From: Kudoa neothunni
Lineage: Eukaryota > Animalia > Cnidaria
Reading direction: 5' to 3'
Assembly (NCBI GenBank): GCA_964304625.1
Contig: OZ199839.1
Span: 1,030,180 to 1,094,179 of the forward strand
Length of the DNA stretch: 64,000 nt
In this document: piece by piece, positions 1 through 39,502 of the stretch
Numbering within the stretch: the stretch's first letter is position 1
Layout of the letters: every line of letters begins with the position of its first letter
Program-made: the position numbers and the translations under genes
Notes under the pieces: generated by a model
The model's input: the letters and a program-made list of their open reading frames with translations, nothing else
What the model was told of the DNA's origin: nothing
The model's database searches: none

Positions 1-2
1 CT

Positions 3-2804
3 TTGGATGACAATTGGTTTGTTTATAGAGGGAACTTGTTTAGTAGTGATAGTTAGTGGTTTATTAGCATTTTTATCTCGCAATTTTCTGGCATTTGCTT
101 TGTTTTTAGCAATAGTAATTAGTTGATTGACTTCTTGAGAAATCGTAGTAATTTTCGGTTGAATTAATTTTGGAGATTCCTCTTCTATTATTACAGAATT
201 ATCCTCTACAGTGGAGAAGTAAAGGGTATCTTCTTGATTAATTGGAGTAGGAATTGTAGTTGGTGTTGGAGCTTTAGGAGCGTTATATGTTGGGATATTG
301 GTTGGTGGATCATAGTACACAATAAATGATGAATTGGATGAAATTGATGAATTTAGAATGTTTGGTTCCTTTTCAATTAGTTCTAATTTGACAGCAGAAC
401 AGTCGCCTTCAATTGATGAGTTGGGTGATTTATTTGGTGATTTAACACTTACAATAATAACATCTTCATCATCTTCAATGGAATTTTCCAAAATGGCAAC
501 GTCTAGATTGTTTTCCTGTGATGACTGATTCATCGTTGAATCGTTCAATAAACTGTAATTATTGCTTAATTCTACTGTATTTTCATCAGCCATAATTGCC
601 ATTAATTCATTTCTATATTGCTCATGTTGATTATCAAATGTTAGAGTTTTTTGCGACCTGTTTGATATTGTCTTATTAGGCGCTAACATTATGTCTATAA
701 TATTTATTTCCTCTGGGTTGGGAACTATTATTTGCTTAAAATTATTATTTTGATTCTCAATTTCATTTTCCCTAACTATCTGTTCTAGTTTTAGTCGATT
801 TCTTTCAAATTCAGCCCACCATTTAGCTTCCTTAGCATTTTTTAAGCGATAACTGACATTATCGCTATTGCTATTGTTAGCTGAGTTATTGTTATTATTC
901 ATAAAGTTGATTGTCTTGTCAGTGTTTATATTAATGTTAATATTAATATTATTGTTATTATAGTGGTGGTGGTGGTGGTGATTTTGGACATTATGTTGTG
1001 TGGTTAAATTGCATGTTGTTTCATTTCTATTAGATACAGATTTGGGATTGAGAATTGGATTATGGATTGGATTGGATTTGGTGCACGTAGATATAACATT
1101 CTTTTTATATAATTCTAGTGCACCAAGGAAACCGTAATTATTATCAATATTATCAATATTATTATTATTATTATTAATATTAATATTAATATTATTATTA
1201 TTATCATTATTATTATTATTATCATTATTATAATAATAATTTTGGTTAATATCATTCTCCGATGGTTGTAGTGTAACTTTAGCTGCGTCGTCATTATTCG
1301 TGTTTACATTGTTGACATTTGTTGTTGATATTGATGCTGATGTTAATGTTGTTGACGTTGTTGTTGATGTGGAATTAATCAAATTAATCAAATTTTGTTG
1401 AGTTGCAGATGAGTTTAAGGTTGCGGTCGTGTTAACATTGACGTTATTGATATGATCAACAGTTTTATTGGTGTTATTATTATCAATGAAATGATTGTTG
1501 TTTAATAGTGATGGAACAGACTTTTCTTCGTGTAATTGTTGTTCCTGCTGTTGATTAGTAATAGAAAAGGAATTAGTAGGAATGGTGTGAAAGAATGGTT
1601 GAGTCACGCAAGGATTAGCGTGTTGATCATTAATAATATCATTATCAATAACGTTCAATGTAGGAATAGAATTGTTGTTATTTTCCGCGTTAATTTTAAC
1701 ATCGCAATGCGTTGCAGCTATATTAAAAGTTACTTGTTGTTGACCGGTTGCGTCAACCGAGTCAGTTGATGGATTAGATGGATTAGCATGGTAAAGTGAT
1801 GATTTTGGAGAATGTGAAATTGATGAGTTCGAGTCATTGGAATGGGTAGATTCTGTTGGATATAAATTCAGTGGATCATTTAGCGAAATGATGAGGTTTT
1901 CGCAGTCGAGCAATGGAGAGTCGTTTACCGATTCTTCTTCGTCTATTTCTTCGTAGGCGTCGCATGGTAATTCGTTATCAGCGTAATGGTCGGTGGTGAA
2001 TCGATAATTATCATCCGCTAGCTCATTTACAGTAATCTTGTTGGTTTCATTAGTGAGTAAATTAGTGGTGCTTTCTAGTGATGTAGTGTGTGGTGATTTG
2101 GAACAATTGTCGATTGGAATATTGTTATATAAATGAGAATCATATTCCGATGGTTGGATGGATATTGCCAAGGTTAGTTGGATAACCAGATTATCGGGGA
2201 TTAATCCGATTTCCATAAAATTTTCATTTTTCTCGTTTAGTTGATCAATGATGGCGTTTTTAAGAGCATCAATAGAAAGCGAGTAACGTTGCTTTCGCTC
2301 TAGTACTCGTTTTGGGAGTTTTGGATTGCAACGATTTATTACCATCCAAACCAACTTTAAAGATGGCCTGATTTTGACATCTTCTGATGGTTCAATCGTG
2401 TCAATATTGGGACATGGACAAGCCAAGGTAGGTATGTTTCTATCGTAATACTCATCAATTGCGTGTTGAGCGTTTTCCGAGTGTTTAATTGAGGACAACA
2501 TTTCCGTAAAGATTGGCATAGAGCATTGAAACAATGAAATGTACTTTCGTACAAAGTCAGCCACACTTTTAGCTATAGGCGGTAGTTTTGCGCACGTACC
2601 TTTCAATTCTAGATATGAAGAATATAGATGAAAAATCATCGGTGAAAGTTCGTGGTCAAAATTCCTCAGCATCGAGACCTCGCAAACTGATTTTAAAGGT
2701 ATCTTCATAATCAGCGCATCGTAATTTTGCGAAATATGCATAAATTTTCCATTTCCGCTCCGAAAAAACGAAAAATTTTCGCCTGGTAGGGGGCTCGAAC
2801 CCAT
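3..2804 (-). CDS. Long Asn-rich open reading frame (>=934 codons, runs off the left edge); probable N-terminal region of a second tRNA-associated non-LTR retrotransposon ORF
   Basis: Manual translation of the minus-strand frame finds no stop from about 2860 to position 3. It is missing from the ORF track because its stop lies outside the window. It begins MGSSPLPGENFSFFRSGNGKFMHISQNYDALIMK from the ATG at 2804 inside the tRNA half; the next ATG is at 2741. It contains poly-Asn (~1140-1235) and His6 (~963-980). No RT motif is visible in the window, so the retroelement identity is inferred from context. Confidence 0.7.
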   Translation of the reverse strand, partial: MGSSPLPGENFSFFRSGNGKFMHISQNYDALIMKIPLKSVCEVSMLRNFDHELSPMIFHLYSSYLELKGTCAKLPPIAKSVADFVRKYISLFQCSMPIFTEMLSSIKHSENAQHAIDEYYDRNIPTLACPCPNIDTIEPSEDVKIRPSLKLVWMVINRCNPKLPKRVLERKQRYSLSIDALKNAIIDQLNEKNENFMEIGLIPDNLVIQLTLAISIQPSEYDSHLYNNIPIDNCSKSPHTTSLESTTNLLTNETNKITVNELADDNYRFTTDHYADNELPCDAYEEIDEEESVNDSPLLDCENLIISLNDPLNLYPTESTHSNDSNSSISHSPKSSLYHANPSNPSTDSVDATGQQQVTFNIAATHCDVKINAENNNNSIPTLNVIDNDIINDQHANPCVTQPFFHTIPTNSFSITNQQQEQQLHEEKSVPSLLNNNHFIDNNNTNKTVDHINNVNVNTTATLNSSATQQNLINLINSTSTTTSTTLTSASISTTNVNNVNTNNDDAAKVTLQPSENDINQNYYYNNDNNNNNDNNNNINININNNNNNIDNIDNNYGFLGALELYKKNVISTCTKSNPIHNPILNPKSVSNRNETTCNLTTQHNVQNHHHHHHYNNNNININININTDKTINFMNNNNNSANNSNSDNVSYRLKNAKEAKWWAEFERNRLKLEQIVRENEIENQNNNFKQIIVPNPEEINIIDIMLAPNKTISNRSQKTLTFDNQHEQYRNELMAIMADENTVELSNNYSLLNDSTMNQSSQENNLDVAILENSIEDDEDVIIVSVKSPNKSPNSSIEGDCSAVKLELIEKEPNILNSSISSNSSFIVYYDPPTNIPTYNAPKAPTPTTIPTPINQEDTLYFSTVEDNSVIIEEESPKLIQPKITTISQEVNQLITIAKNKANARKLRDKNANKPLTITTKQVPSINKPIVIQ
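2761..2779 (-). terminator. Pol III terminator-like oligo-T tract after the tRNA half
   Basis: Minus strand reads AAAATTTTTCGTTTTTTCG (T5, T6) immediately after the discriminator base. Confidence 0.6.
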
Positions 2805-2813
2805 GGCCTCAAG
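2780..2813 (-). pseudogene. 3' part (nt 40-73) of tRNA-Lys(UUU)
   Basis: CTTGAGGCCATGGGTTCGAGCCCCCTACCAGGCG is identical to 8572-8605. Upstream of it is retroelement 3' UTR (…TTTTTGTGTA) instead of the anticodon loop (…CTTTTAAT). Confidence 0.95.
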
Positions 2814-3268
2814 TACACAAAAATAGCGGGAAAAATAGTGTTCGTAAACTAATCTAATAAATGTTTATTTTGGGAAGGTGGAAGTTGGAATTGGGATGGT
2901 CCTTGATTGGTTGGATGATCTAAATAAAATTAACAATTATTAAACAAGTTACGTGCGGTTTGGAGGAGAAGATTTCGTTTTCGCAACTCCCTGTAAGGGG
3001 GGGTTGCGAAGACGGAATCTTGGGAGGTATCTTCATCGGCTTTTTGGACGGTTGGGATAGTGGTTTTTGGATGGATTTCTTAATGGATTTTTTGCGCGAT
3101 GAAGGTGGAGGTGGAGGCGCCAAAGTCATCACTGGGGTAGCTTTGATAACCATGGGTGGCGTCACAGATTTCTTCTTCTGGGGAGGTGGATTTTTAAAGA
3201 TATCATCAGTTTGGGATAGAAACACTTGGGATGATTGGGAGTTTTGAGGAGAGTTGGAGGTGGGGATT

Positions 3269-6200
3269 TCAATTGTTGGGATGACTTGTTGGATAGTCTT
3301 GATGATATTGGTGGATTTGGTTGCTGGAGTGCGTTTTTTTAGGCGCGTTTCGCAGCAGTGGTTTTTGGTTGTCCACATAGACACCATTTCTACAAATGGG
3401 TGTAGCGGAGGTTCCAAAGACATGGGCTCTCCAGATGGTCGAAGAGTCCAAGAGAACAGATCTGGTGATTGCTTTCTTTAAGGCTGACACCCTCTTTTTG
3501 TTTTTAACGAAAAGAGCTTTATAAACATCATTATTGGGCTCATAATGAGCCCCCAAAGAACCGTAGATCAGCGCATAAAGTTGGCACGAGTAGCCCTTTT
3601 CCATCCATTGTGATTGCTCCTCCCTGTACTTGGCAACCTTGTGTTGGTATACTTCTTCCAGGCGAGAGAGTGACGATTCGAAGGTGATGGAAACGTCGCA
3701 GATAATGACATCTTTGGTTTGGTCATTGAGGAGTACAATATCTGGTCGACGGTTAGAGGGGATCTGTGGGAAAATGGTGTCGAGGAATGTCACCCAATTC
3801 TTATTGGGCTTCATCTGTTCAGCGATGAGGTCAACAATATGGTTGTGTCGAGCGGACCTTGCTCTTTCACCGAACTTGCAGCCACCCAGAATATGTCCTA
3901 GGTGTTCCGTTGCCACATGGCAACGTCTACAGTCGGATTCAGAACAAAGTTTACGTATTTTCAATACGCACTTTGTGGGGAGCGCATTCACTCGCGCCAG
4001 GATGCCAAAGCGGTAGACATAGGGAGATACATCACCTTGGTTAATCCAGGAGTTTGCGACTTTGCTTCCCACAAAACACTCAACGGATCGTCCCTGCATA
4101 CGCTGAGACTTCCATACGTCGAGGAACATCGACTGAACATGCCACCGAATACGGCGTACTCGGGTGGCACCTCGCTGTTGATGAGGGGGAATGTGTGGTG
4201 GCGGACTGAGGTAATCAGAGTCAATGTCAATCTTTGAGGGAGACTGTTCATCGACTTGCTTGACTTGGAGTCCAAGAGACTTTGCATTCAAGCGGATGCT
4301 AGAGAAGATACTTCTCACGTCTCTGGACTTGATATACTCAGTGTCCCTGTTAAAATAGTCCTCAGGGGTGAGACTTTCGTTGGTTCTCTTACCAACGATG
4401 GATAAAATTGCGTCCTCAGACAGTTTGGCGACTCTTTCATCCGCGGAATGGATGAGGTTGAGTGCGGAGGCTAATCGGAGGGCACAAAAGTCGAGTTTAA
4501 GGCATCTCAGACCGAATCCCCCCACTGCACATGGAGTGTACAGTAGGGACTTTGTAACAGATTCGGGCATAGCTAACCAATGGCGAACTGATGACCGAAT
4601 CTCAGAATCGATTTTCTTGAGGTCCTCGATGCGGATAATGTTATTCTTCATAGAATACTCAAGGGTGGGCATTAAGTAAGTTTTCGTGAGGTTAATCTTC
4701 ATAAAGTGCAGTAGGGGAGCGTTTGAAACTTTTTGAAGGTTCTCACTAAACTTAGGGAAGCAAGGTGGCAGGTCTTTAAACGACTTTAGATTTTTACAAG
4801 TACCTAGGTACTTATAAAAATCCTCCATCAGCGGGATTGGCACACCTTGGAGAACATATGGTTGGATTAATGTGGAATTTACAATGCGCGTTTTATTCTT
4901 AAATGTGACATTAAGTGTCGCACTCTTAGAATGGTTAATGCGCAGACCAAGATCATTAATAAATGCTTCGAATTGATGGAGGAGGACATTCATTTGGATA
5001 TTATTCTCGGTCAGCAACACAATGTCATCGGCATATGCCAACGCACCAAAAACCTGACCGTGAAGTTTATATCCCTGTTTTGAGTCATCAATTCGTCGCA
5101 AAAAGGGGTCCAAAACGAGGTTAAAAAGTAGGGGGGATAAGGGGCATCCCTGTCGTACACCTTTACCATAAGGGTAGAGGTAGCCAGTTCCGCCGCTCTT
5201 ATCCGTAACCTCGTTGAAGCTGTTTGCGTACATATGTTTTAAGAGGTTGGTGATTTGATGGGGGATATTAAAGTGGTTAAGTTGCTTTAATATCTCGGAA
5301 TGGGGGACGGTATCGAAGGCCTTTTTCAGGTCTATCCAGACAGCAGATAGAGGGTTCTTCTCACGTCGTACGTCATCTAAAATTTCCTGGAGAATGAACG
5401 CGTGTTCAACGCATCCATTTCCACCGACGAATCCTTTTTGAGACGGGCTTAGTTCAACTAGGGAGGCGAGCTTTTTATTGACCACACTCATAAACAATCT
5501 GTAGATTGTTTGCGTAATAGAGATTGGTCTATACGCTGAGGGGTCCAACACATTAATTTCGCCGTCGGTCTTTGGCAGGAGTATGAGACGGCTAACAAGC
5601 CAATCATCAGGGACTCGCTCAGAATTAAGGATCCTGTTGAACAACTTTGCTAGATGAGAATCCATAGAGGGCACCTTTTTCCAAAAGGCCATATGTATTC
5701 CATCCTTACCAGGGGCAGTATCTTTCTTTGCGCGGTCCAGAGCAGCACTGACTTCTTCATCAGCAATATAAAAATCGCTGAATCGGTTACCAGACTGATA
5801 GAGGGCTTCTGTGGTATACGGCACCGGTTCTACTTCATTAAGTGATACTTGAGAGGAGATTTTAACTTTCTCAGGGGGCTTAATAAAAGTAGGTTCTTCA
5901 TCATCTAGCTTAGAGGCTGGAGAGGCTAAAGGGCTAAAGTTGGGAAATTTAAACTTAGGGGTAGGTGGAGACAACGGTTCACGGAATATGAGGTCTTCAG
6001 GCGCAACCTTTTCAGGCTCACCATCATTAGATTCATTTTCAACATGATCCGAAGGAAGAGAAGACATTTGACTGTTATCCAAAGCTGGAATCTTAATAGG
6101 GGAAAGTTCGTCAGCATTCGTACCACAGAGAATTGTCTTAACGTCGTTGGAGTTGATGAAGGAGAGAGAATCAACTATTTCCTCAGCAGATGCTTCGCAC

Positions 6201-8596
6201 CACTTTGGCCTAGCCTCAGTTATTTCACGAAAACATCGCTTTTGGTTACAGCGATATAAAACACGCAGACGTTTTGCTTCATTTTTAGGGGCTTTTTCAA
6301 CTGGAGAATCATCTTTAATGGTGACTTGAGTGGTTGATTCTTCAGGTGCATCTTGAGTCGGTGTAGGGGAAGCAAGAATATTCTTTAAAGCTTCATCGAC
6401 AAAGGTTTTCGCGGGCTCCGGAGCTTTCGGATGGTAAACCATCTTCAGTTCTTTTGCACCGTTATGCGCCGTTGTGATGAAGTGAGTATATAAATCATTA
6501 ATGGGTAATTCAGAGTGAGTGGACATAACAGACCTGAGCTCATTAGAGACGCGCTCCAATGTTTCAGCTTGTTTCTTACGAAATTCAGCTGCCCTTTTAC
6601 GAATTTTGTCATGTTTCTCACGAGCCGCTATTTCATTCATTACTTCCTCCGGAATTGAAGAGGTTTCATGTGCTTTTTCATTAGCGGCATCACGTTTGGC
6701 TTGTAAATAAGATGGGGGTGGTGGAACAAAGATAGAGCGCAGTTCGGAATCTGCGATATCTTTTTCCAGAGCGGGAAGATCTAGAGGTTTGTCTAGATTT
6801 GGGTTGAGTGGGATTGTATCAACATTTTCATGAGATTTAAAGGATTTTTGTCGACAATCACGCAAATAATTATCAACAAAGGCAAGAGAGTGTTGGCGTT
6901 TACTTGGTTTTAATTTGGATTGAGCAAAAATAGAATCATTAGGCGTAAAAATAACTTCCTCAACATTAGGCTCAAACTCGGACATAATTAATGGTGTAGC
7001 GCAAACTTTCTCCTCATTAAGTGCTTCCACATCAATATCGGAATTGTTAATAATAATAGATTCATCAATATTGACGGGTTGCATAGAATTAAGAGCTTTT
7101 TCATTAGAATTACCATCAATTAACTCATTATGGTGCTCAATGTTAGATTTGGTTAAATTACTCGATTTAACACGCTCATTCAACTTCTTACTAATTATAG
7201 TAGGTATAAATTTGCCAAACTTATTCTTAGTAAGCGCGGATTTTGATTTTTTGGGTTTAACGTTAACTGGTTTAGCTTTAAACTCATTTGGAGCATCTGC
7301 GTCATTAAACACGATATCGCTATCGTCCTCACTTAAAACTTTAGAATTCTGACCAATAAATTCCATGTTTTCATTTTTAATGGCGTTTGCTGCGTTAAGT
7401 GATTGAAAAGGTGTAAATTTAGCACTATCATTATTCAATGAATCATGCGCAGGCAACACCGAAGTGTCGTCGTCGTCGTTTACACTTAAAATTGATTCAT
7501 TATCACCAGATTCAACGTCGTTTAATTCAGTATAGCCTTCCATACCTTCATAAACAACGTTAAATGCTGGGTTTCCTACAGTTAACTTGCTCATAAACAT
7601 TGCGTGAGCATCTGGATCAACTACCAAACCATTAATGTTCTGCAATGCTTTAAAGCTATCAAACGAAGAAGAAATTTTATTATTGGTGGAATTAACAACG
7701 CTAAAAGGTTGTTCTAACTCGCAATTGTCACTGTTGTACTCAATACTATCAACAGGTGGATTATTAAGGTTATTGTTACTCATTAATATGAGATTAGGTT
7801 GAAAATTGTTGCGAGCTTTGCCAGAACGAGTAGAAGATGATTTTTTAATGTTATCTGATTTAATATAACTAAGGAAAGAATCTAAATTGTCATGAGAGGC
7901 GAATTTAGATTCAAAGTCACGGCCGGAGATTAGGACCAGATTATCTGCGACAATAACATTCCCATCGTCATTATACAGGATTAAAGGTAGTGTGTTGTTA
8001 TTTATCATGAAAAGAGCACTCTGACGGATACTCTTTAACAAATTGTTAATTTCCGATTTTTTAGTGCCAGATGGCACCGCTTTCGGCTTATTAGAGCGCA
8101 ATGAAACTTTTGATGCTGAGTCACTATCGGCACGTTGCACGTGCAAATTAAAGTCGTTAGTTTTATAAGGAAAAGTGGAGTTGTTAGATGCATCAATACG
8201 ATCATTAGATGTAACATTTGCACTACTATCTATCGATAACGCAGTAATAGGCAAAGTACCTTGTTTGTAGGCCATAGAGAGGGTGGGATCTTCGGACAAC
8301 TTTGATGATATATCTTCAGAAAAAGTTAACTCAACAAAGCGGGCTATACGTTGGAGAAAAGGAGACCCTTGGAGCTTCAAACGCCGACGTCGCAGAAACT
8401 CATCAAGGTAATATTGAATGAAATCTGAGTAGCCTGTTAGGTCGACTTCAGCTAAACTGAGGTCAAACCCAACAAAAGTGGCATCGTTAGATTCCTTATA
8501 ACCTAACCAACCATCTAGTGCTAAAATTTCGCGTTTTCGAGCTGAAAAAAAGGTCGAAAAACGAAAAATTTCGCCTGGTAGGGGGCTCGAACCCAT
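3269..8596 (-). CDS. Non-LTR retrotransposon polyprotein: disordered N-terminus, reverse transcriptase, CCHC zinc knuckle, restriction-like endonuclease
   Basis: RT motifs APGKDG, YRPISITQTIYRLF, QKGF, DLKKAFDTVPH, GVRQGCPLSPLLFN, YADD (5024-5035) and YKYLG. These are followed by GGFGL, CRRC-x7-H-x4-C, RHN, RRPDIV…DVSI…KVAKY and GSLG. The frame is also open to 8647 through the whole tRNA (1792 aa); the start codon is uncertain. Confidence 0.95.
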   Translation of the reverse strand: MGSSPLPGEIFRFSTFFSARKREILALDGWLGYKESNDATFVGFDLSLAEVDLTGYSDFIQYYLDEFLRRRRLKLQGSPFLQRIARFVELTFSEDISSKLSEDPTLSMAYKQGTLPITALSIDSSANVTSNDRIDASNNSTFPYKTNDFNLHVQRADSDSASKVSLRSNKPKAVPSGTKKSEINNLLKSIRQSALFMINNNTLPLILYNDDGNVIVADNLVLISGRDFESKFASHDNLDSFLSYIKSDNIKKSSSTRSGKARNNFQPNLILMSNNNLNNPPVDSIEYNSDNCELEQPFSVVNSTNNKISSSFDSFKALQNINGLVVDPDAHAMFMSKLTVGNPAFNVVYEGMEGYTELNDVESGDNESILSVNDDDDTSVLPAHDSLNNDSAKFTPFQSLNAANAIKNENMEFIGQNSKVLSEDDSDIVFNDADAPNEFKAKPVNVKPKKSKSALTKNKFGKFIPTIISKKLNERVKSSNLTKSNIEHHNELIDGNSNEKALNSMQPVNIDESIIINNSDIDVEALNEEKVCATPLIMSEFEPNVEEVIFTPNDSIFAQSKLKPSKRQHSLAFVDNYLRDCRQKSFKSHENVDTIPLNPNLDKPLDLPALEKDIADSELRSIFVPPPPSYLQAKRDAANEKAHETSSIPEEVMNEIAAREKHDKIRKRAAEFRKKQAETLERVSNELRSVMSTHSELPINDLYTHFITTAHNGAKELKMVYHPKAPEPAKTFVDEALKNILASPTPTQDAPEESTTQVTIKDDSPVEKAPKNEAKRLRVLYRCNQKRCFREITEARPKWCEASAEEIVDSLSFINSNDVKTILCGTNADELSPIKIPALDNSQMSSLPSDHVENESNDGEPEKVAPEDLIFREPLSPPTPKFKFPNFSPLASPASKLDDEEPTFIKPPEKVKISSQVSLNEVEPVPYTTEALYQSGNRFSDFYIADEEVSAALDRAKKDTAPGKDGIHMAFWKKVPSMDSHLAKLFNRILNSERVPDDWLVSRLILLPKTDGEINVLDPSAYRPISITQTIYRLFMSVVNKKLASLVELSPSQKGFVGGNGCVEHAFILQEILDDVRREKNPLSAVWIDLKKAFDTVPHSEILKQLNHFNIPHQITNLLKHMYANSFNEVTDKSGGTGYLYPYGKGVRQGCPLSPLLFNLVLDPFLRRIDDSKQGYKLHGQVFGALAYADDIVLLTENNIQMNVLLHQFEAFINDLGLRINHSKSATLNVTFKNKTRIVNSTLIQPYVLQGVPIPLMEDFYKYLGTCKNLKSFKDLPPCFPKFSENLQKVSNAPLLHFMKINLTKTYLMPTLEYSMKNNIIRIEDLKKIDSEIRSSVRHWLAMPESVTKSLLYTPCAVGGFGLRCLKLDFCALRLASALNLIHSADERVAKLSEDAILSIVGKRTNESLTPEDYFNRDTEYIKSRDVRSIFSSIRLNAKSLGLQVKQVDEQSPSKIDIDSDYLSPPPHIPPHQQRGATRVRRIRWHVQSMFLDVWKSQRMQGRSVECFVGSKVANSWINQGDVSPYVYRFGILARVNALPTKCVLKIRKLCSESDCRRCHVATEHLGHILGGCKFGERARSARHNHIVDLIAEQMKPNKNWVTFLDTIFPQIPSNRRPDIVLLNDQTKDVIICDVSITFESSLSRLEEVYQHKVAKYREEQSQWMEKGYSCQLYALIYGSLGAHYEPNNDVYKALFVKNKKRVSALKKAITRSVLLDSSTIWRAHVFGTSATPICRNGVYVDNQKPLLRNAPKKTHSSNQIHQYHQDYPTSHPNN
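8547..8571 (-). terminator. Pol III terminator of tRNA-Lys
   Basis: Minus strand AAATTTTTCGTTTTTCGACCTTTTTTT (T5, T5, T7) directly after the tRNA. Confidence 0.7.
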
Positions 8597-8644
8597 GGCC
8601 TCAAGATTAAAAGTCTCGCGCTCTACCAACTGAGCTAACCAGGC
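8572..8644 (-). tRNA. tRNA-Lys (anticodon TTT)
   Basis: GCCTGGT TA GCTC AGTTGGTA GAGC G CGAGA CTTTTAA TCTTG AGGCC ATGGG TTCGAGC CCCCT ACCAGGC G. Perfect 7-bp acceptor stem, 4-bp D stem, anticodon stem with one G-U pair, A and B boxes, discriminator G. One U50-C64 mismatch in the T stem. Confidence 0.95.
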
Positions 8645-12129: not shown

Positions 12130-12960
12130 GGACTATTTGGAGATGTATGCATTGATGAGCAGCTAGTTTCTTTCAGAGGCCGTTGCCCCTTTAGGCAATA
12201 CATGCCCAGCAAATCAGCCAAATATGGCATTAAGTTTTTTCTCGCAGTTCATCCTAGATCACCCTATATATATATAATATCGATGTCTATTTGGGAAATC
12301 AGAACCAACTAAATAAAAAGGCAACAAACGTCGGAAAAAAGTAGTATTCAAGTTATCTAGCCTAGTGCATGGTTCCGATCGAAATTTGGTTTGTGATAAC
12401 TTTTTCACGTCTGTGCAACTGACTAACGAACTGCTAAGAAAAAACTAACCTTACTTGGGACATTTAGATCTAATAAACAAGAAATTCCACCATATTCAAA
12501 TATTTAAGACCAGTGAAAAATACCCCCTTCAATTCTTCTCCTTTTGTGTTTGGTGGTAGAAACATGATTTAAAGGTATTGCCCAAGAGAAAAAAACCTGC
12601 GTACATGTTGTGCACCTCTGCAACTAATACCCACGTTTCCGAAGAAGAGCCCAACAAATCTGATGTAATAGTTCGTTATAACTCTGCAAAGGGGGAGTTG
12701 AGACTGTTTCTTGATTATTTGCATCGGTAAGTGTGAGAAGATTTATTAGACGCTGTCCCCTGATTGTATTCTTCAACATGGTTGATATTTGATTGATAAG
12801 TGGGTTTTCTATTTATAAAGAAATATTTAATCAAGCCGGCATAATGTGAATAACGCTCCAACAAATTCGATTCGTAGGTGTCAATTTTGTGCAAGAAAAA
12901 AAAGATCTTAAAACGTCATAGTTTCAACGCTTACGCGTAATGTTGTAGAAAACATTCTAA
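12130..12960 (+). pseudogene. piggyBac (PGBD4-like) transposase remnant
   Basis: Frameshifted peptides CIDEQLVSFRGRCPFRQYMPSKSAKYGIKFF, CDNFFTS, GTFRSNKQEIP and YNSAKGGVE. Confidence 0.85.
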
Positions 12961-13003
12961 AACAATTTTCTTGAATCATTATGATAATTTCTTTGTTGGT
13001 TAA

Positions 13004-14558
13004 CCCATTCGCGTCCAGTGTGCATTTGAATGCATATAAAAACACAATATTTTAATACACTTAACTACTGTTTCATACAACACATTTGATGTATCATAAG
13101 CAATACTTAATTGTCTTCACTACTTTAAGAAAATATTAAGTTTTTCATCTATATATTGAGCATGCTCCAAATATGAAAGATTACACACACAAAATTAATC
13201 AATGTCAATTTTAAAAATTAATTTGAATTGTTCTTAACAAATAACAAAATATATAAAAGTATTTTGGTAACAAGTTATAAGAATCAATAGTTATTCTGCC
13301 TGACGCTGATATTTCAGAAAACCATAATGAGGCTACAGACGAAAAAAGAATACAGCTCGAATACCAAATTTATTCGGAATATATAGAAACCAACTTTCGA
13401 TGAAAATGCTAATTATGAGAATTCAGAGTGTTATTTTGAAGAAAGAAATGGACTTTTTAATCCTATCGATTATTTCAAACAAACCTTTATTCCAGACAGT
13501 CAAATTCATGTTTCAAAACTGATAGTGATGAAATAGAAAAGTTTATTGGAGTTCTCATCTTAATGGGTATAGATATAGTAAGGAAGCCTAGATATCGTTG
13601 TTATTGACAACAATGTTTGGACTACTTAAGATCAAATTGCTTAAAGATTCAACCCCAATGGAATTTACCTGTAGATGAATGAACAGATGATACCATTTAA
13701 AGTTAGATGCTGTTCAAATCAATATATGCCTAGAAAACCAACCAAATGGGGATTTAAAATGTTAACTTGAGGATATTTTATTGGGGAATAAATACAGCTA
13801 TGGTGAACTTTTAGCTATTGTACAAGAGAAATAAAAGAGAGTAAAATATTTTATTTACTGAATTTCGCCTATTCAGTATGTGAGACTTTAATAATTATTA
13901 AAAAAGGAAACAAACGTAAAGTTAAAGCGCGGGAGACCACCATTATCGATAGAGAATGAACCGGAAAATTGTGTATTCCTCTCTGTCTTATGATATCCGA
14001 TTCGGCAATGTTGGGCCTTACCCAAAGTCACGCAAATCAAATGCATTAATGCAAAGCGAGTTGTTTCCAAGTTAAAGAAAGGAATTGTTTCTGCGAATTT
14101 CATCAAAAATTATATTAATTAGATTGAACTATTCAGTATGTTTCGTTATATTGTGTGTATTTTCTTGCAAATTATGATGTCATTTTGTCTTCTAACCTTA
14201 GTGAAATTAAATAAACCGAACCAATACGTGTTAAAAAATAAATTTATAATAAAAAATTTGCATTACGTTGACATCATAAATCTATTTATATTATTATTAA
14301 GAAAAATGAAATAAATTTTGAAATTTAAAATAATTATTCATTAAATCTAATATTAGAATAGTTACTTTGAATCTTTTATTCATTTTCAACTTTTTTTACC
14401 ATTTAGTCCCAGTATACATTTAAATGCACATGAACAAAATTTAAAAAATCTTCATAACAAAATTATTTTTTCAAATTAAAATTTTTAATTTTTACTAATT
14501 AATATCCCCTTAACAATATATATTATTTATGAAAAATAAAACATAGAAAGTGAAAGGG
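13004..14558 (+). mobile_element. Internally deleted piggyBac element (PGBD2/3-like)
   Basis: TTAA|CCCATTC … GAAAGGG|TTAA ends. Remnant peptides DEIEKFIGVLILMG, QYMPRKPTKWGFKM and the C-terminal ERNCFCEFH. Confidence 0.75.
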
Positions 14559-18088: not shown

Positions 18089-20338
18089 CAGTAGGTGACC
18101 GATTTTCGGTAACTTCGGACTTTGTTCCATTAGAATATTGTTTTAATATTTAAAAATGGGGGTTTTCACATTATTATCGCTTAACTGATTTCCCGTAACT
18201 TTTCAGCTTTAGGTGGATTTAGTGGTGTGCCTTTTTTTACATTTGTAATGTCTGAAAAAGTTAAAAATAGGGAAATAATAAAACTAAAATAAAAATCTAT
18301 TATTTTTTTAAAGTATACTAAACAGGAGTGCATAAATACTACTTTTAGTAAATTTAAGCTCCTTTCTATTTCTACTCTTGATATCATCCTGATTAGGAAG
18401 AAAGATATAGTTTTATCTTATAAACTGGCTTGGCTTCTTCGGAGAGAAATAATTTTAAACAGTGTTCAAATCACGACATCGATACTATGGTAATGACTGT
18501 GAATTATTTGAGATAAAAAATTGAACCTAAACGTAGTAATGACCCATGATTGATTTCTTTGTTTTAAATCACGATTTAATTTAAAAATATCATTATCTAC
18601 GACGATGCTGCTGCTGCTGCTGTTTATGTTGACTAAAGTTTTGTAGAAAATTGGTAATCTAAAGGTAGTGGCTATTACCACGGGAATCAATTTCTCTGCA
18701 ATTGTTATCTCTATTAAATAACTAATTTCACATTACTATTATTTATATTTTTCTCTACTAAATTATAGAATTAGGTAACAATTGAGAATATCTTTTTTTA
18801 CATATTTATATTGTTTATTTTATTGATCGCATTCCATAATTAAATGAAAGATTTATTTATCTTAGTTTAAAATACAATCAAAATTGTATTGTATCATTTT
18901 CTATCAATAATAAGGTTAAAGTTGAAGAATTTTGTGTGGATTATATTGAAGGCAAATGGATTTAAATGATTAAAATACGCGTTTAGAACTTCATTTGAGG
19001 TATCAAAATTAACTGGGTTCAGTAATATTTTGGTTATATTGTATTTCCTTTCTATTCCCATTGATTTGAGAGCGTCAAAGAAATAACGGAAAAAATCATT
19101 AAGATTTGAAAATTTCTTTATTTTCTGTTTTAATTGACCATTAATGGCTTCTAATCTATTATTGGTCAAGTTTCCATAGGAACGATATGCTACACTTAAT
19201 CCTATGACCCCTTCATCAGCGATTGTTTCCTTATTGGATTTAAAATAGTTAGTAAACTTATCGCTGCTTTGTTGAAAAAGATTATTGCACAGTTTATCGA
19301 ATTCCTGTTTATTTTTCGAATAGATAATTTTATTGAGTTTCAAGCAATTGGCCCCGTTTCTCTTGAGTGATACCATATTTCGACATAGTTATTTCACGTC
19401 TAAAACTTTGGGAAACATAAAATATGAAAATCATTAGATTGGAGTGTGGTGCTTGTCAGTAATGATCGTTCGGACATTTTGAGTCATGTTCGGCATCATT
19501 TTTATTAGTTGAGAAATATACCACTTAATTGACTCCGCCGTTTCATCGTACAAGACGCAGTCGCTAGTTATGTAGGTTTCACCAACCGAGTCTTTTGCAA
19601 CAGACAGATACAATGGCGCACTAATAAACAAATGAAACAACGAAATAGAGAAAACCTCTTAAGATTACCGTGAGTCTAGCAGTTTATAGGTTGCATTGAA
19701 TCTCTTGTGATTGGAAATCACAAAAACTATGTTGTTTTAAAAATGCTAAATAAAACAGGAAAGAATGGATGATTAGGGAAGTATTTAACAAATATCTTTC
19801 TAATTTTGACAATGTATTCAAAACGATACCGCTGCAGTTAGCAGTGATATAAATACATCCTCCCAAGGTATGCTTCAAACATTGTTCCTAATTAAAAAAT
19901 CATGGGACGGTGTTTCAAAGGATATCGTATTTAATTGTTTCAGAAAATATTAATTTAAGCAATAAAGAATTCTCAGCTGGAAATTCCGAAATTATTCAAA
20001 AGGAAGTCATTATGTCTACATCAAAACACTTTGACGAGCTTGCTCCTTTGATTGTTGAATCTGCGGATTCTGGAACGGAAGAATTTATATCAGAAAAAGA
20101 TTTATTTAAATTTTTAAACAAGCTGAATAGATATACGATAGAGAGGAATTGATTATCTAAACGAAATAATGACTTAAGATGATCAAATTACGACATACGT
20201 CTTTAGAAATATGAATAAAAATAACATATTATTTCAATAAAAGGAGATGAATGTATAAATTAAATTAATTTCTTTAAAATAGGCATATATTTTTGTATTT
20301 GCGTGCGCAGAAAATTACGGAAAATCGGTTATCTACTG
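18089..20338 (-). mobile_element. TIR element (27-bp imperfect TIR, TA flanks) containing a decayed Mutator/ZSWIM-type transposase
   Basis: TIRs CAGTAGGTGACCGATTTTCGGTAACTT and CAGTAGATAACCGATTTTCCGTAATTT (23/27 match). ORF fragments 19434-19640 (PLYLSVAKDSVGE…DETAESI…IITDK) and 18894-19376 (TNNRLEAINGQLK) resemble the MULE domain. Confidence 0.75.
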
Positions 20339-20679: not shown

Positions 20680-21054
20680 TTAGTCTTTCCTAAACATGTA
20701 GGCATCTATACACGAATCGATCATATCATCCCTTTTATTAGTGACATGTCGGAGGGATCTTTTGAGAGCATTCCAAGTCGACTCTATTTTGTTTGTGTGA
20801 AGTCCTTCCGAATTTACAAATTCATATTTGTGGATTACAACAGAATGTTGAAACCCCAATTCATCCAGACGTGAATATGAAGGCCAACCATCCGTTACAA
20901 TTAGGGATCCTTCGATGACATTTCTGCAAATCATGTCCTCGAGGGTTGCTTGGTCCCTTATTAAAGTTTTATCAAAAAAAACCTTATTGTTTGTTATGTA
21001 CATAATCTCTTCCCAGCCCTGTACACAAACCTGGTAATTAGTTGAGTAATCCAT
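20680..21054 (-). pseudogene. Merlin/ISXO2 (IS1595-like) transposase remnant
   Basis: RDQATLEDMICRNVIEGSLIVTDGWPSYSRL…HSVVIHKYEFV…GLHTNKIESTWNALKR is a typical ISXO2 DDE core; the N-terminal part is lost. Confidence 0.85.
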
Positions 21055-27989: not shown

Positions 27990-29150
27990 GAATAAAGAAA
28001 TGATTATATATAATGATTTTATATATAATTATGATTCAAGAACAGAAAGGGGACTTAGTTGGAGATGTCATAACCGAGGATGTTGCGGTAGAATCTATAC
28101 ATGTATTGGGGGAAACACGTGATTGATGAGATTATCCATTTGAAAATTCGCTAAAAAACCAGACATCAAGCAATTATTACTCCATTACCACCTTCTGATA
28201 TCATCATCAAGGCCTTCGAAAATGAATACGAAAGTATTTCCGATTCAATAACTAAAATTAGGCGGCAAATGGGTATTAAGCCTATCTCTAAATATGACGA
28301 TATTCCAGAAAATTTAAAGAAAACACTCTGTGGTCAGCAGTTTTTGCATTTCGATAGTGGTGTTGGCTCTACTGATAGAATCTTAGTATTTTCCCATCCT
28401 AAAATAATCGAATTTTTGAATAAATCCTTGGTATGGTGATGGTACTTTTTACATTACACACCCAAATAGGAGCACATGTATCACCCATAGTTTTTTGCTT
28501 GGTGCAAAACAAAAAATATGAAACATATTCTACTTTTTTCAAAATGATTTATGATAAAGTTGGTCCCTATGAACCCAAATATTTTTTCTGTAATTTCGAG
28601 GTAGCAATTAGGAAATCGTTTAATGAGGTTTTTAAGAAAACTGGAATTAAGCACTGCCATTTCCGCTTCGCCCAAACAATATGGGGAAAAATAAAAAATG
28701 TAGACTTGGTAAGTCTTTATAAGCAATCGAAGATTCTAAAATCCTACATACGTAAAATAATATTATTATGTTACGTTCCAGAATGTGATGTCGTCAGGAT
28801 CTACGAACTCTTAAAGGATACATTCAAGAATAAACTATGTGGTATAAAAATTGATGAATTCAAGAAATTTTTAGGAAAGGAGTGTATTTACAAAGAAACT
28901 AATACAAGCACTGGATTGTTATCATACGCGGAATTTTGGTCTGTATATGACCCTGTTCTTGGGGGGGGGGGGGGGGGGGGTATGATTCCACAAATAATGC
29001 ACTAGAAGCTTGGCACGGTTCTCTGAAAAGAAAGACTCACTCGGTACATCCTAATCTAAGGAAATTCATAATGCTATTACCAAAAGATGTGAGAAAATAC
29101 AACTTATATGATGGGCTTTCATACCATGAAAGTATAAGCATGTATTTTGG
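27990..29150 (+). pseudogene. Mutator (FLYWCH + MULE) transposase remnant
   Basis: WRCHNRGCCGRI, FLHFDSG…DRILVFS, WYGDGTF, PIVFCLVQNKKYETY, CHFRFAQTIWGKIK and TNNALEAWH across frameshifts. Confidence 0.85.
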
Positions 29151-31483: not shown

Positions 31484-33864
31484 TGTAATAATAGGCAATC
31501 GCTAAGGAGAAATTGTGATAACACGTCCAAATCATCAGTCACACTTAACTTTTAGAACACATAAAGGGTGTTTTACGTGATTGAGTGTTATGCCTGTAAA
31601 AATGACTGCGAGGGGCTAGGTGATATAAAATAGGTTACAACAACTAACATGTGTAACGAATAAATTATTCAATACGAGATTATGTTGCATCAACACTAAA
31701 AAACAATAAACCCAACGTAATCAGAATTCAACATGGCCGAATTTGTTCGTTATCACTTATTAAGATTACAACCATCATTCTGCAGTTTTATCAACCTATG
31801 GAAGAGAGATTTCAATCGTCTTTTAAAATAATTATTTATTCTTCACATGAAGAATTAATCGATAACTAATGAAAATTGTTTTATCTAGCGTTGATAAGAA
31901 TATTTTTAGCGATAATATTGTTTGGTAATGTACCTATCTTTATCAGAAACCGATTGCAATATCGGGAAAACAATGAATGATTATCATCATTTATATTAAT
32001 GTATGAACGATAAACCCAATGTCCTATCAACTTTAACTATCATATCTGCCTTTTGAGGATAATAATAACTAAAAATGTTTATTTCAATCATCAAAAATAA
32101 TGAATACATTTATGACCAATACCGGAATCAGAATCACAGCTTTATTTTACGGCTGCGAAATCCTAGTTTGGCTCTTGGCTTTTGGCGTGAGGTCAAAAAT
32201 TCTAAATCATTATTGAATTTTTATTCTTTTTTAGTTGAAATATGTTTAAATATTAAAGTGGAACTATTATCAATTAAAAGTTAACGTTAGATTTGAATTT
32301 TTAAAAAGAAAATAATACAAATTTTTAAATCAAGGCTAATTGAAAATAATGATAACATTTCTGGCTTTCGTTTTAAATTTTAATGATATTATTCCCAAAT
32401 TTAAAAACATATATTTAACATGAATTAATTTACTTCCTGATTAAACAAAAGTGGATTGATGTAATTAGATTAAATAGATGGGAATTAATATAATATATTT
32501 ATAATGGTTAAAATATTGAGAAATAACATGATTAGATATTACAATTCTAATGTTGGAATTCAATGAGACAACTAAGAGAAAGTCTCAAAAACTCACCAGG
32601 CATAACATTAATAACGAGTTTCCTGGAAAATAAGGTCTCATTCGAAAACATGTAATAGAAACTTGCTATATAACTACAATTTATATATAACCTAATTTCA
32701 TTTTCGCTATAAAACAATATTACTTAAGCTAATTATAACAAATAAAATTATTATACTTTGCTAAAAACCGACTGTGAATTATATAATAATTGAAAAAATC
32801 TTCATTTTCTGACCTCCTGAAAAATTATTAAACCAGTGTATAATTCATAATTTTAATGAAATATTGAATTTCCTATCAATTAATAAAGCATATAATAGCA
32901 GTTTATATCCTATATTCATACTTAGAAGTAAAACATTCTATTTTTTCCGATTCCAACACTTTATATAACATTTAAATTACTTCAAAAATAATAAATCAAT
33001 CAAATAACATTAAAATAATCTTAGTTTAAATGCTAGTTATTCCTCCAACTATGCTCTGGTCGAATTCATCCTAATTGGAGCATTAAATATCGTACAATTT
33101 TTTATTGCTACATTGGATGAGTTTTAAATCATACTTTTATTAAAAAATAAATTATTTTTTATAAATATAATATTACAATATTACGCAATTCTTGTGTTTT
33201 TTTTCAAAATTTAAAGGGTATTCTTCAATGACCGTTTGAAACAGATTCGACCTCGTATTTATACTAAATTTTGAGTTATGAAATGATTTTTGTATTAATT
33301 TATCCAAAAGCCCATCTAACAAACTTTAAGCTTATGCGAAATTTTAAAGGTCTTTTGTTAGCGATGTGGTAAATTTCGTTATTCCTGACATAGATTTCAA
33401 GTATATTTAGGTATTAATGCAGTTGTAGAGATGTATAAATTGATTACTGAAATACTTTACAGAACAAAATAAAATTTGATCATAAGAGTCAATTCGATTT
33501 CAATCTTTCGCTTCAAACAAGTAGTGTTTTAATTTTTAGTGGATAAAAATTTAACATTAGGCACAAGTCGTTTAACGTAATAAATAATAATAATAAATTC
33601 TCAAATCCCAGTAAAAATACATAAATATATATAAATGCATACAAATTAATAATAATATCAGACAGGAAAAAGGACAATGTTAGTGATCGAATAAATTTTG
33701 ATGTTTCATTTAAAAATAATCATTAATAGATTAATTTCAGTTGAATCGAGTAGGAAAAATTTTTACAATGCGAAGCCATAACATAAAAGCGAAAAAAGAA
33801 AATATATAACTATAATTGATAGCAAATTATAGAATGTAATCAGTGAGTTAGTTAATGAGCAAAT

Positions 33865-34286
33865 TCATCTGACCATTTCTCTAGTGCTTGGAAAATTGTT
33901 AAGTTCCTAATGATACAAAATAATATCAATTCAGAAAAATGGTTATTGTTACAACGTATTCTTGGCGAAGTGCACAAGAACCACAGCAAAGATGCGTACA
34001 ACAGTCTCCGCAGAAATTCCCCTACGAATTTGAGTGGTAAGATAACAACTGCATAAAACATAATAGGAATTGTGCCTACTTTGATTTCGTAACGCTCTCT
34101 AATTTTCGAACGAAAAGCAGCACCAACACAAGAAGAACACAAACCATACAGAATACACCAAGTGTAACGACTATCTCCAAACACATCAGCATTCATTCCT
34201 TCCACAACTGGTGGAAAGAAAAATCCAAGACAACATATTCCTCGTTCACGATGGCAATTGAATAAATCACTGGTCCAATCCCTCAT
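33865..34286 (-). CDS. PLAC8/cornifelin-family protein, paralogue 2, 3 exons (34286-34080, 34021-33953, 33906-33865)
   Basis: MRDWTSDLFNC…CCLGFFFP…FRSKIRERYEIK|GNFCGDCCTHLCCGSCALRQEYV|ELNNFPSTREMVR*. Introns are 58 and 46 bp, at the same positions as in paralogue 1. Confidence 0.9.
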
Positions 34287-37390: not shown

Positions 37391-39502
37391 CCCTTAATCG
37401 ATACCCTGCGTGATTTCCTCGATTCGATAACTTGGGCTAGACGAGCCCGCCCATTCAAAGAGATGGTATTATTTAAATCAGTAATGATATTATTTTAAAT
37501 GTTCTATCTTAATTTGTAGAAATATGAGGGATAAATAAAAATAAGACAGTTTAACAAATAAAACTAAAATTTTCCACACTCGCTACATGTTATAATTTTT
37601 TTTTGAATACTCATTACATACATAGCGCGTGCATTTTACGAAAATTTGTTTGCTCCTCCTGCGAATTGATTTAGGACAAAAAATGCAACGCTTTCTTTGT
37701 TTAATGACGCCTTTTTGAGACATAGAGGACCGATTACTTGAAAAATTAAAGCCGACGATCTCCAGTGAGCGCTTTACTGCAGGTTGACAACTAACCTTAA
37801 AACTTTCATCTCTTCTTTCTTGATGGAGTTTAATCATCGAGACGGCCAACTATAATAAAAACTGATGCCTATCATCACACTTTTTATGAGCAGAATTATT
37901 TTTTGACTATACACTACATAGGAGTAAAAGGCTGCCAAATCAACAACCTGACGAAAAACTGCTACAGACCAACGATTTGATTTTCGTTTACCACTGTAGA
38001 TAGACACACATTGATCACAGTATCAGTACCGCATTTCTTGACATTATAGTCTCGAATTGCATTTGGCTTTGAATGGAATTCTGAGCTTATTTCTTTAGAT
38101 CGATGTTCGGATCATAAGATAATTACGGCGCAATTTTTCTTCGGAACATACGATATAATAGTAAATTGCTTGTAAAATCCAAACAACGACGAAAATAATG
38201 GTCTTGATTTGTTTGTCATGAATTCTGATGGAATAAATGTTCTACACTTTCGAACCGTTCCAAGAATTGACGTCTTACGTTGCTGTAGGTGCTCAGTGAG
38301 TTTCCATGTTATGAAGTAATTATCATAGGTGGTTCTCCTATCCGAGTTAAGTGGGTAGTTTACTAGGTCGGTGACAACTTTAAAACTCGGGGATTTTTCC
38401 CGTTTTTGATTTTGTTGATCTATGCATGGAACGATGTTGGAAACATAACGTATTTCGCTGTCACATTCCATCCAAAATTTAATTCCATACTTAGACGGTT
38501 TTTTGGTATATACATCAAAAATTTCAACCGTCCTCCGAATGAATACAGCTGTTCGTCAATCGTGATATTGGATCTAGGGGTATAACTTTCTTTACAGATT
38601 TTGACAAAAGATTTGAATATATTTCTTATCGGTGAAAAAGCGTCGTCGGATTTGACATTTTTTCTTAACCAATATTGATCGAATCTAAGGTAGAGCCAAA
38701 TCTTTTTGAATCTCTCACAAGACATTGTTGAACGAAACAAAGGTTTACCGTGAATTTCGTGCCATAAAATCTTGTTGTCCTTAATATTCGATTTATAGGC
38801 CCAGAGAGTAAAAGTTGTTCCAAAAAAGCTTTAAATTCAGTTAAATCAACGGGTTTCCACTTTTCACCTAGATTCTCGAATCCTTTTTTTTATTGTGTAT
38901 TCAATAATTTCTTCCAGCATCTCGTTTTTCATGGAGTGATAAAACATCGTCTCTGGAGCTGTAGCATCAATATCATCAATAGGCGTTATAACAACTTTAT
39001 TGTTATCGATAATATTGTTTGCAGGTGTTCTTCCTGGTTTGAATTTGGATCCCAAACAATCGATTTATCTTTTGAAATAAAAACATTTTTTCGTGGGTCG
39101 AATTGTCACTAATCTGTATCGATTCATCGTTGTTTTTGTTTCAAATTGTTTTTCCTTTAAAATGATTTCCAGATTTAACTTCAAAAATATTTAATATTAT
39201 TTACGATGAATGATACAACTTATACCCGAATCAGCTTCTCCATATGATTTATTATTACATAAATATACCGCTGATTCTGTCTAACTAACACTTTCTGCAT
39301 CTTAAGATGAGTATTCATATGAAACATCAGATTCCGCCATTATATTGTACCACAAGTTTAGGATTGCCATAAACGTACTTAACTTTGTTAACGTGAAGGC
39401 TAATTTGGACTAAAAACAGCCATAATTTAGGGTATTTTTGAGCACTTTACTGCGAAGATAGGCTCGTGGAATCGAATCCATGGTTATCGTATCGATTAAG
39501 GG
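37391..39502 (-). mobile_element. piggyBac element with frameshifted PGBD4-like transposase
   Basis: Perfect 14-bp TIR CCCTTAATCGATAC with TTAA on both sides. Peptides FRSTMSCERF…LRFD, TIDEQL, DNYF, GTVRK and the C-terminal RKRCIFC. Confidence 0.92.

What the first reader, a model, noticed from the sequence alone, without database searches (positions are those of the whole stretch)
2761..8644. RLE-type LINE inserted inside tRNA-Lys(UUU) with the tRNA gene rebuilt in front of it
Seen: on the minus strand the order is complete tRNA-Lys, oligo-T terminator, intact RT-CCHC-RLE ORF, 3' UTR, tRNA nt 40-73, oligo-T terminator. The 3' junction is exactly between T39 and C40, just after the anticodon loop. 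Known: R2-group elements are often site-specific for multicopy RNA genes (R2 in 28S rDNA, NeSL and CRE/SLACS in spliced-leader genes, Utopia in U2), and insertion usually disrupts the target copy. Inference: here the interrupted tRNA is restored, analogous to phage attP sites that regenerate tRNA 3' ends, so insertion may be nearly neutral and leaves a reusable target. Two mechanisms fit. One is a tRNA-headed template whose cDNA anneals to the upstream tRNA half. The other is a staggered cut giving a 34-50 bp duplication. I do not recognise this family, but I cannot exclude that it is catalogued.
Basis: partly seen in the sequence, partly recalled or inferred. Interest (0 to 1): 0.93.

Follow-up and report, generated by a model that had tools for sequence, protein, structure and literature searches.

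The report
Retrotransposons that rebuild their target tRNAs
In a tuna parasite (the myxozoan Kudoa neothunni), an apparently undescribed group of jumping genes inserts at the same position inside many different transfer-RNA genes, brings along a replacement back half so the gene stays whole, and piles up in rows behind it.

Summary
Observation confirmed, but the locus is one case of a genome-wide system. The genome is Kudoa neothunni (contig sizes match PMC12239612). The element is an intact R2-group (RT-CCHC-RLE) LINE joined to tRNA-Lys nt 40, first in a stack of two diverged families behind one complete tRNA. 18 of 20 RT clusters lie 1.7-5.0 kb behind a tRNA gene on the same strand (0.07 expected). 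All five loci I could read (Lys-UUU, Lys-CUU, Met, Trp, Gln) show the complete tRNA plus nt-40 halves, as do relatives in three other public assemblies. They form their own clade (100/100), outside R2 and Utopia, with a new N-terminal domain. Terminators follow element lineage, and an intact Gln element carries its own acceptor-strand variant, which favours a head copied from element RNA (0.55) over a plain 34-37 bp target duplication (0.3). tRNA-targeting RLE LINEs and long duplications are known separately; full restoration across many low-copy tRNA isotypes was not found in the literature searched. Array copy numbers are unreliable (assembly gaps); no RNA data. The scan's first readers noted the same pattern on other pieces of this genome.

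The parts
8572..8644 (-). Complete tRNA-Lys(UUU) gene; nt 1-39 (8606-8644) are the fixed host half
   Evidence: only complete copy of this sequence in the genome
8572..8605 (-). tRNA nt 40-73 heading element A and completing the gene; carries ATG at nt 49-51 (8594-8596), in frame with the ORF
8523..8571 (-). Element-borne trailer: T5 Pol III terminator (8564-8568) as 5' arm of a weak hairpin; same in all three A copies, alignable to the Met-locus element
   Evidence: z 4.5-4.7 to m1; fold z -2.1
3269..8596 (-). Single ORF, 1775 aa from the tRNA-encoded ATG (frame open to 8647)
7900..8490 (-). N-terminal domain shared by the clade (helical, ending in a P..L...DG.V....L motif); no zinc finger, Myb or Ulp1
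4910..5575 (-). Reverse transcriptase core (QGCPLSP, YADD)
3878..3931 (-). CCHC zinc knuckle
3430..3850 (-). Restriction-like endonuclease (RHN, RPD, D, K..KY, YGSLG)
2814..3268 (-). 3' UTR, no poly(A), ends directly on tRNA nt 40; GC hairpin near 2980-3010
2780..2813 (-). Downstream tRNA half (nt 40-73), identical to 8572-8605; also the head of element B
1..2779 (-). 5' part of element B (39-42% aa identity to A in RT-RLE): own terminator trailer (T runs 2763-2775) and N-terminal ORF, cut by an assembly gap just left of the window

Best explanation
An R2-group non-LTR retrotransposon clade that uses tRNA genes as self-renewing landing sites. Shown: same-strand insertion with the 3' end at tRNA nt 40, a complete tRNA plus oligo-T in front, stacks of different families behind one gene, at 18 or more tRNA loci. 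Inferred from R2 biochemistry: the RLE nicks the bottom strand at nt 39/40 and RT copies the element RNA from that 3'-OH (TPRT). Inferred from junctions: the RNA begins with tRNA sequence (at least the 3' half, possibly the whole tRNA) plus the element's own terminator; the cDNA end pairs with the target, either with a top-strand overhang left by a downstream cut or with the upstream tRNA half, and primes the second strand. The gene is thereby rebuilt from host nt 1-39 plus a 3' half and terminator that come partly or wholly from the element. New copies go mostly into the rebuilt gene and push older ones away; recombination also reshapes the arrays. On a move to another tRNA the half is replaced by target sequence while the trailer is kept.
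For: Junction at nt 40 (0-5 nt microhomology upstream) in 16 of 16 junctions at five loci and in three outside assemblies. tRNA adjacency 18/20 against 0.07, max 2 in 20,000 shuffles. Gln array: intact element E3 has ..AACC.. in its upstream half and ..GGCC.. downstream, in one contig; no full tRNA carries AACC; the gene's 5' strand pairs Watson-Crick with AACC and by two G.U with GGCC; E3 and E5 differ at 56% of four-fold sites, so each lineage kept its own compatible acceptor strand. Trailers follow lineage across loci. A copies diverged 20 synonymous to 8 non-synonymous (p 0.002). ATG at nt 49-51 is in frame in all four intact-type Lys-headed lineages despite homopolymer spacers of different length, and is the only in-frame ATG ahead of A's conserved N-domain. 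No 5'-truncated unit among about 20 heads read. Precedent: earwig R2 propagates a 22-bp downstream-target duplication with three substitutions in its RNA (PMC3774820).
Against: The direct evidence for an element-borne half rests mainly on one array and covers only nt 69-70; nt 40-68 are identical everywhere and could come from the target each time. After target switches the half always matches the local gene, which a staggered cut explains more simply. No promoter, ribozyme or RNA 5' end was found (Rfam; no RNA run with the organism). Every array read contains a 200-N gap, so unit order and number are uncertain.
Confidence: 0.55

Rival explanations
1. Plain long target-site duplication: bottom nick at 39/40, top cut 34-37 nt downstream (at the tRNA 3' end); the RNA starts at the trailer, for example after RNase Z cleavage of a read-through transcript, and supplies only the terminator.
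For: Lineage-specific sequence starts within 1-3 nt after nt 73 in most heads; halves match the local tRNA after switches; U2-targeting relatives show about 20-nt downstream duplications (PMC4640811); R9 makes an exceptionally long duplication (title cited in PMC3774820).
Against: Needs two recombination or conversion events to explain E3's unequal halves; does not explain the conserved frame of the tRNA ATG or the lack of 5'-truncated copies; the cut distance would have to track tRNA length.
Confidence: 0.3
2. Insertion is ordinarily disruptive as for Utopia; restored genes are the rare survivors (repaired by conversion from the downstream half), and the arrays grew mainly by unequal crossing-over.
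For: Near-identical units (E2=E5; A copies 99.4-99.8%) and one real chimera (u2) show recombination in arrays. Selection removes alleles with a broken low-copy tRNA.
Against: Families 39-83% identical in protein share one array and one junction nucleotide; internal units also keep complete heads; same layout in other organisms; purifying selection between copies.
Confidence: 0.1
3. The half belongs to the element's 3' end and insertion is just after nt 73, so the tRNA is never cut.
For: Gives the same overall order of parts.
Against: The variant half goes with the element that follows, not the one before: E2 is identical to E5 yet is followed by AACC while E5 is followed by GGCC.
Confidence: 0.04
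4. Chance insertion or misassembly.
For: Arrays contain scaffold gaps, and the 13.6-kb repeat at Lys-CUU and the internal duplication in B sit on such gaps.
Against: Short-read contigs confirm both junctions; genome-wide statistics; independent assemblies.
Confidence: 0.01

Closest known systems
LIN15_SM and LIN25_SM (planarian R5/LIN, NeSL clade) and NeSL-1_TV (Trichomonas); PMC4640811
   Same: RLE non-LTR elements specific for tRNA genes (Arg, Glu, Pro). The machine-read S6 Fig shows LIN15_SM in several tRNA-Arg isoacceptors and one 5' junction that runs to about nt 65, i.e. a long duplication.
   Different: LIN15 3' junction is about nt 25/26, LIN25 earlier still; the one legible 5' junction stops short of the acceptor strand, so the gene is not rebuilt; one isotype per family; no arrays behind a restored gene described.
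Utopia (U2 snRNA-specific, NeSL clade); PMC4640811
   Same: Best-scoring outside hits of the clade profile are U2-inserted; small low-copy RNA-gene target, occasional tandem insertion, 20-bp downstream duplication in some families.
   Different: 27-29% identity; targets U2 and leaves it disrupted; has N-terminal zinc fingers or Ulp1; the Kudoa clade falls outside the Utopia/YURE group (90/92).
R2 (28S rDNA), especially earwig R2; PMC3774820
   Same: Same RT-CCHC-RLE fold (TM 0.76-0.80 to R2Tg, R2Bm); target sequence carried in the RNA gives precise 5' junctions; earwig R2 carries a downstream-target duplication with substitutions.
   Different: R2 disrupts a high-copy target, has ZF-Myb and an HDV ribozyme; the tree excludes the Kudoa clade from R2 (100/99).
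SLACS/CRE1/CZAR (spliced-leader genes) and R9 (rotifer 28S)
   Same: Long downstream duplications (about 22-49 bp for the trypanosomatid elements, 126 bp for R9; own knowledge, the SLACS paper was not held).
   Different: Multicopy tandem targets, other clades, no radiation over many genes.
Phage and island attP sites in bacterial tRNA genes (own knowledge); Dada DNA transposons (PMC8869645)
   Same: attP restores the tRNA 3' end; Dada has diversified over many tRNA isotypes.
   Different: Recombinase or DDE chemistry, not TPRT; Dada disrupts genes of over 100 copies.

Membership tests
R2 group (RLE non-LTR retrotransposons) | Single ORF with non-LTR RT | tested here: met
R2 group (RLE non-LTR retrotransposons) | C-terminal CCHC and PD..D..K endonuclease, no APE domain | tested here: met
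   model pLDDT 87 matches R2 structures, E 1e-43
R2 group (RLE non-LTR retrotransposons) | Integration by TPRT at a bottom-strand nick | not testable with these tools
   uniform 3' junctions fit it; no biochemistry
R2 clade in the strict sense | 28S rDNA target | tested here: not met
R2 clade in the strict sense | N-terminal zinc finger(s) and Myb | tested here: not met
R2 clade in the strict sense | 5' HDV-like ribozyme | tested here: inconclusive
   no Rfam match; Rfam models R2 ribozymes poorly
R2 clade in the strict sense | Nested among R2 in the RT-RLE tree | tested here: not met
Utopia / NeSL clade | U2 or spliced-leader target | tested here: not met
Utopia / NeSL clade | N-terminal zinc fingers or Ulp1 protease | tested here: not met
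Utopia / NeSL clade | Grouping with NeSL-clade RTs | tested here: inconclusive
   outside the Utopia/YURE group (90/92); a sister position is not rejected, p-AU 0.34
R5/LIN and NeSL-1_TV (tRNA-specific families) | Insertion inside tRNA genes | tested here: met
R5/LIN and NeSL-1_TV (tRNA-specific families) | Same site in the tRNA | tested here: not met
   LIN15 about nt 25/26 against nt 39/40 here; NeSL-1_TV site not legible
R5/LIN and NeSL-1_TV (tRNA-specific families) | Common descent | not tested
   no identified LIN, R5 or NeSL-1_TV protein came up
CRE / SLACS, R4, HERO clades | Tree position with reference members | not tested
   no verified reference sequences in hand

The most novel reading that the evidence does not exclude
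A myxozoan retrotransposon clade whose RNA is headed by host tRNA sequence has colonised about half of the parasite's low-copy tRNA genes. It rewrites their 3' halves and terminators at each insertion, so part of the host's tRNA set evolves inside retrotransposon lineages (G.U-compatible acceptor variants), and the Lys-headed elements take their start codon from the tRNA T-stem.
Probability: 0.45. Interest if true: 0.92.

Novelty: new variant of a known kind. Interest (0 to 1): 0.82.

Why it matters
Kojima and Jurka (PMC4640811) call the persistence of target-specific LINEs in low-copy genes poorly understood, because each insertion destroys a target. This clade offers a direct answer: the target is rebuilt and reused, which allows several old lineages to share one gene and a radiation over many tRNA isotypes. 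It gives a natural series of related proteins with different targets but one cut position, useful for studying RLE target recognition and second-strand priming, the least understood step of TPRT, and relevant to R2-based insertion tools that need a non-disruptive site. It also means that many tRNA genes of this parasite may be half element-derived.

Tried and rejected
Locus-specific trailers (my first reading): rejected, trailers follow element lineage. AACC head taken from a second tRNA-Gln gene: rejected, no full gene carries it. Template jumps as the source of chimeric units u3, U2, w2, E4: rejected, each lies on a 200-N assembly gap; only u2 is gap-free. A loose end at 8534 as an empty allele: rejected, it maps to C3:4115285, a library chimera. 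YURE as tRNA-specific (memory): wrong, it prefers U2-derived satellite. 'Only Lys(UUU) gene': not claimed, other Lys-like matches exist. The idea that the tRNA ATG was created by the T-stem mismatch: not supported, Lys-CUU has the same ATG in a perfect stem. Host identification by eIF1A search gave nothing. Atlas hit of the N-domain to HSF DNA-binding clusters (0.83) is at chance level; its model was too weak for a fold search (pLDDT 57). RNA and other-specimen runs held no reads of the organism.

Full report
Observation. ARAGORN and Rfam find one tRNA in the window, Lys(TTT) at 8572-8644 on the minus strand. A stop-free frame runs from 8647 to 3269 (1792 aa) and holds an RT and, aligned with 19 relatives, intact CCHC, RHN and PD..D..K motifs. 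Its AlphaFold model (pLDDT 87) matches R2Tg and R2Bm at TM 0.76-0.80. tRNA nt 40-73 recur exactly at 2780-2813, and the element's last base does not match T39. Short-read contigs, probably from the same specimen, cover the element from half to half in one 5802-nt piece and carry the upstream flank across nt 39/40.

Host. The window is G000:C2:1030180-1094179 of a 40,260,978-base assembly with three chromosomes; the remaining contig is 18,219 bp. PMC12239612 reports 40.2 Mb, three chromosomes and an 18,219-bp mitochondrial contig for Kudoa neothunni from yellowfin tuna. That paper has no occurrence of 'tRNA', 'retrotranspos' or 'transposable' in its main text, and no myxozoan paper on these elements came up.

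The locus is an array. Only one complete copy of this tRNA sequence exists, followed by five exact 3' halves 5.8-8.2 kb apart. As assembled the order is tRNA, A, B, B, A, A, then decayed C and D. A and B are 39-42% identical in RT-RLE yet end at the same nucleotide. A copies differ by 0.2-0.6%, with 20 synonymous against 8 non-synonymous changes between U1 and U5 (expected synonymous share 0.34-0.43, p about 0.002). Caveat: each of the five arrays I read contains a 200-N gap, one directly left of the window, and short-read depths would also fit two different haplotype arrays. Junctions are secure; unit counts and order across the gaps are not.

The system is genome-wide. A protein search gives 20 RT clusters; 18 start 1.7-5.0 kb downstream of a tRNA gene on the same strand, against a mean of 0.07 and a maximum of 2 in 20,000 shuffles; 18 of the 39 tRNA genes found are occupied (both lists are lower bounds, and the Met gene was found because of its element). 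A second query added no further cluster. At Lys-UUU, Lys-CUU, Met and Trp the gene is complete and each element is followed by the local tRNA from nt 40 on; at Gln a full gene is followed by seven halves. All 16 junctions read fall at nt 40 with 0-5 nt of microhomology upstream. Intact ORFs lie mostly next to the tRNA and decayed ones distally, as expected if the rebuilt gene is the preferred target.

It is not confined to this species. The only close relatives in public protein sets (46-48% identity) show the same layout: a Gln half at both ends of a unit in ENA ERZ795007; an Asn-like half between two different elements and a Lys half at both ends of a B-like unit in ENA ERZ28624939; and a 4.26-kb tandem unit with a 34-nt half beginning at C40 on a contig of a fish assembly (Muraenolepis orangiensis, GCA_027704905.1), which I take for a parasite contig (inference). 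Gln- and Lys-type lineages group across organisms, so isotype preference is old, with some switches (A at Lys is sister to the Met element).

Classification. The elements form one clade (100/100), outside the R2 group (100/99) and outside the Utopia/YURE group (90/92); which of the two is sister is unresolved (p-AU 0.34). The next-best profile hits are U2-inserted Utopia elements. The N-terminus lacks zinc finger, Myb and Ulp1 and has a helical domain shared across the clade with no Pfam match. LIN/R5, NeSL-1_TV, R4, HERO and CRE references were not identified in the set, so membership of those is untested.

Where the head comes from. The trailer after nt 73 always has a T4 or longer run within 9 nt and follows the element's lineage across loci: A aligns with the Met element (z 4.5-4.7), B with the Lys-CUU elements (z 4.3-5.3), A with u1 not at all. 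So the terminator is element-borne and a target duplication cannot exceed 37 bp at this locus. For the half itself the Gln array is informative. E3 has an intact 1788-codon ORF and differs from its neighbours at 56% of four-fold sites. Its upstream half has A69-A70 while its downstream half and the present gene have G69-G70; an older unit has G69-A70. The gene's fixed 5' strand pairs Watson-Crick with E3's version and by G.U with the others. A duplication of the target would give E3 two equal halves. The simplest reading is that each lineage carries its own acceptor strand, kept compatible with the host half by selection. Two further hints agree. The ATG at nt 49-51 of Lys halves is in frame in A, B, u1 and the ENA Lys element although the spacers differ in length, and it is the only in-frame ATG ahead of A's conserved N-domain; this suggests the half is part of the translated RNA. 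And no 5'-truncated unit was seen. Earwig R2 propagates a downstream-target duplication with substitutions in the same way (PMC3774820). Against this, nt 40-68 do not vary among intact units, halves match the local gene after target switches, and no RNA could be examined.

Mechanism, shown and inferred. Shown: site, orientation, restored gene, element-borne terminator, stacking, spread over isotypes and organisms. Inferred from R2 work: bottom-strand nick and TPRT. Inferred here: tRNA-headed template and homology-primed second strand (0.55), against a 34-37 bp staggered cut with RNA starting at the trailer (0.3), restoration by later repair (0.1), or others (0.05). The first two can be combined: a downstream top cut leaves an overhang that pairs with the cDNA copy of the head, which would explain both the inherited variants and the clean switches. 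How the RNA is transcribed is unknown; Pol III should stop at the T run, so Pol II read-through is more likely (inference).

Novelty. tRNA-specific RLE LINEs are known (NeSL-1_TV, LIN15_SM, LIN25_SM), LIN15_SM shows a long but apparently incomplete duplication at another site (machine-read figure), and long duplications occur in R9, SLACS and Utopia. I found no report, in nine literature searches of a library that lacks Repbase Reports and most subscription journals, of a clade that fully rebuilds its target, forms polar arrays and has spread over many low-copy tRNA genes. It bears directly on the open question of persistence in low-copy targets. First readers of this scan noted the same pattern at other loci of this genome; I treated those as leads only. 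Verdict: real, new variant of a known kind, interest 0.82.

Noticed in passing
L034:2700-2790, L042:3080-3150, L043:100-160 and 5130-5195: Gln-lineage 5' UTRs hold a 33-34 nt intron-like segment (GTAAGT ... branch-like CTAAY ... T-run AG) just before the start codon, conserved between K. neothunni and the ENA relative. An intron kept by a LINE would need an unspliced template RNA. Host eIF1A introns in the window are 57-74 nt.
   Followed up: partly
window 8523-8571; L048:62-112; L027 around C3:3350340-3350395: In Lys-headed elements the trailer folds into a hairpin whose 5' arm is the oligo-T terminator (L048 z -5.8, u5 -3.8, A -2.1; B, C, u1 about -1.3); absent in Gln, Met, Trp heads. Could shield a tRNA-headed RNA from 3' processing (speculative).
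   Followed up: partly
G000, about 25 dispersed sites, e.g. C1:4546245, C3:3756435; also C1:71111 and C1:12500556: A dispersed, diverged family with a TTT anticodon loop and T-arm (tRNA-derived repeat?), plus two other Lys(UUU)-like candidates not among the scored Rfam hits.
   Followed up: no
window 3334 and ORF 2920-3423(-): The window copy has one extra base against U4/U5 and against the short-read contigs, which shifts the C-terminal tail after the RLE (1775 against 1881 aa); possibly a homopolymer error. The 167-aa ORF is the displaced tail.
   Followed up: partly
L023, C2:1006770 onward: Decayed element C has a head identical to B for 78 nt and to A for 49 nt, then diverges (66%); likely recent exchange or deletion between neighbours.
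   Followed up: partly
L028/L029, C3:3364043-3369145: Gap-free chimera u2: first 760 nt from the resident B-like element, remainder from an A-like element lacking its first 565 codons.
   Followed up: partly
L030, C1:2997390-2997466: The complete tRNA-Met has one extra T in the T-loop that the downstream half lacks; assembly error or a defective allele.
   Followed up: no
C2:1815656-1820553 and C2:7764717-7775132: Two decayed RT clusters with no detected tRNA within 7 kb; the second may be the distal end of the array behind C2:7729710.
   Followed up: no
window 62240-62900(+), 44007-47066(-), 33855-34364(-), 12200-13760, 38115-38830, 18897-19388, 20683-21054, 28424-29002: Host eIF1A gene with short introns; an unassigned 1020-codon ORF; a PLAC8-like fragment; several decayed DNA-transposase-like fragments (by eye only).
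   Followed up: no
L050 (JANIIK010003181.1): Contig in the Muraenolepis orangiensis assembly made of tandem copies of this clade behind a half with an initiator-like T-loop; probably myxozoan contamination.
   Followed up: partly
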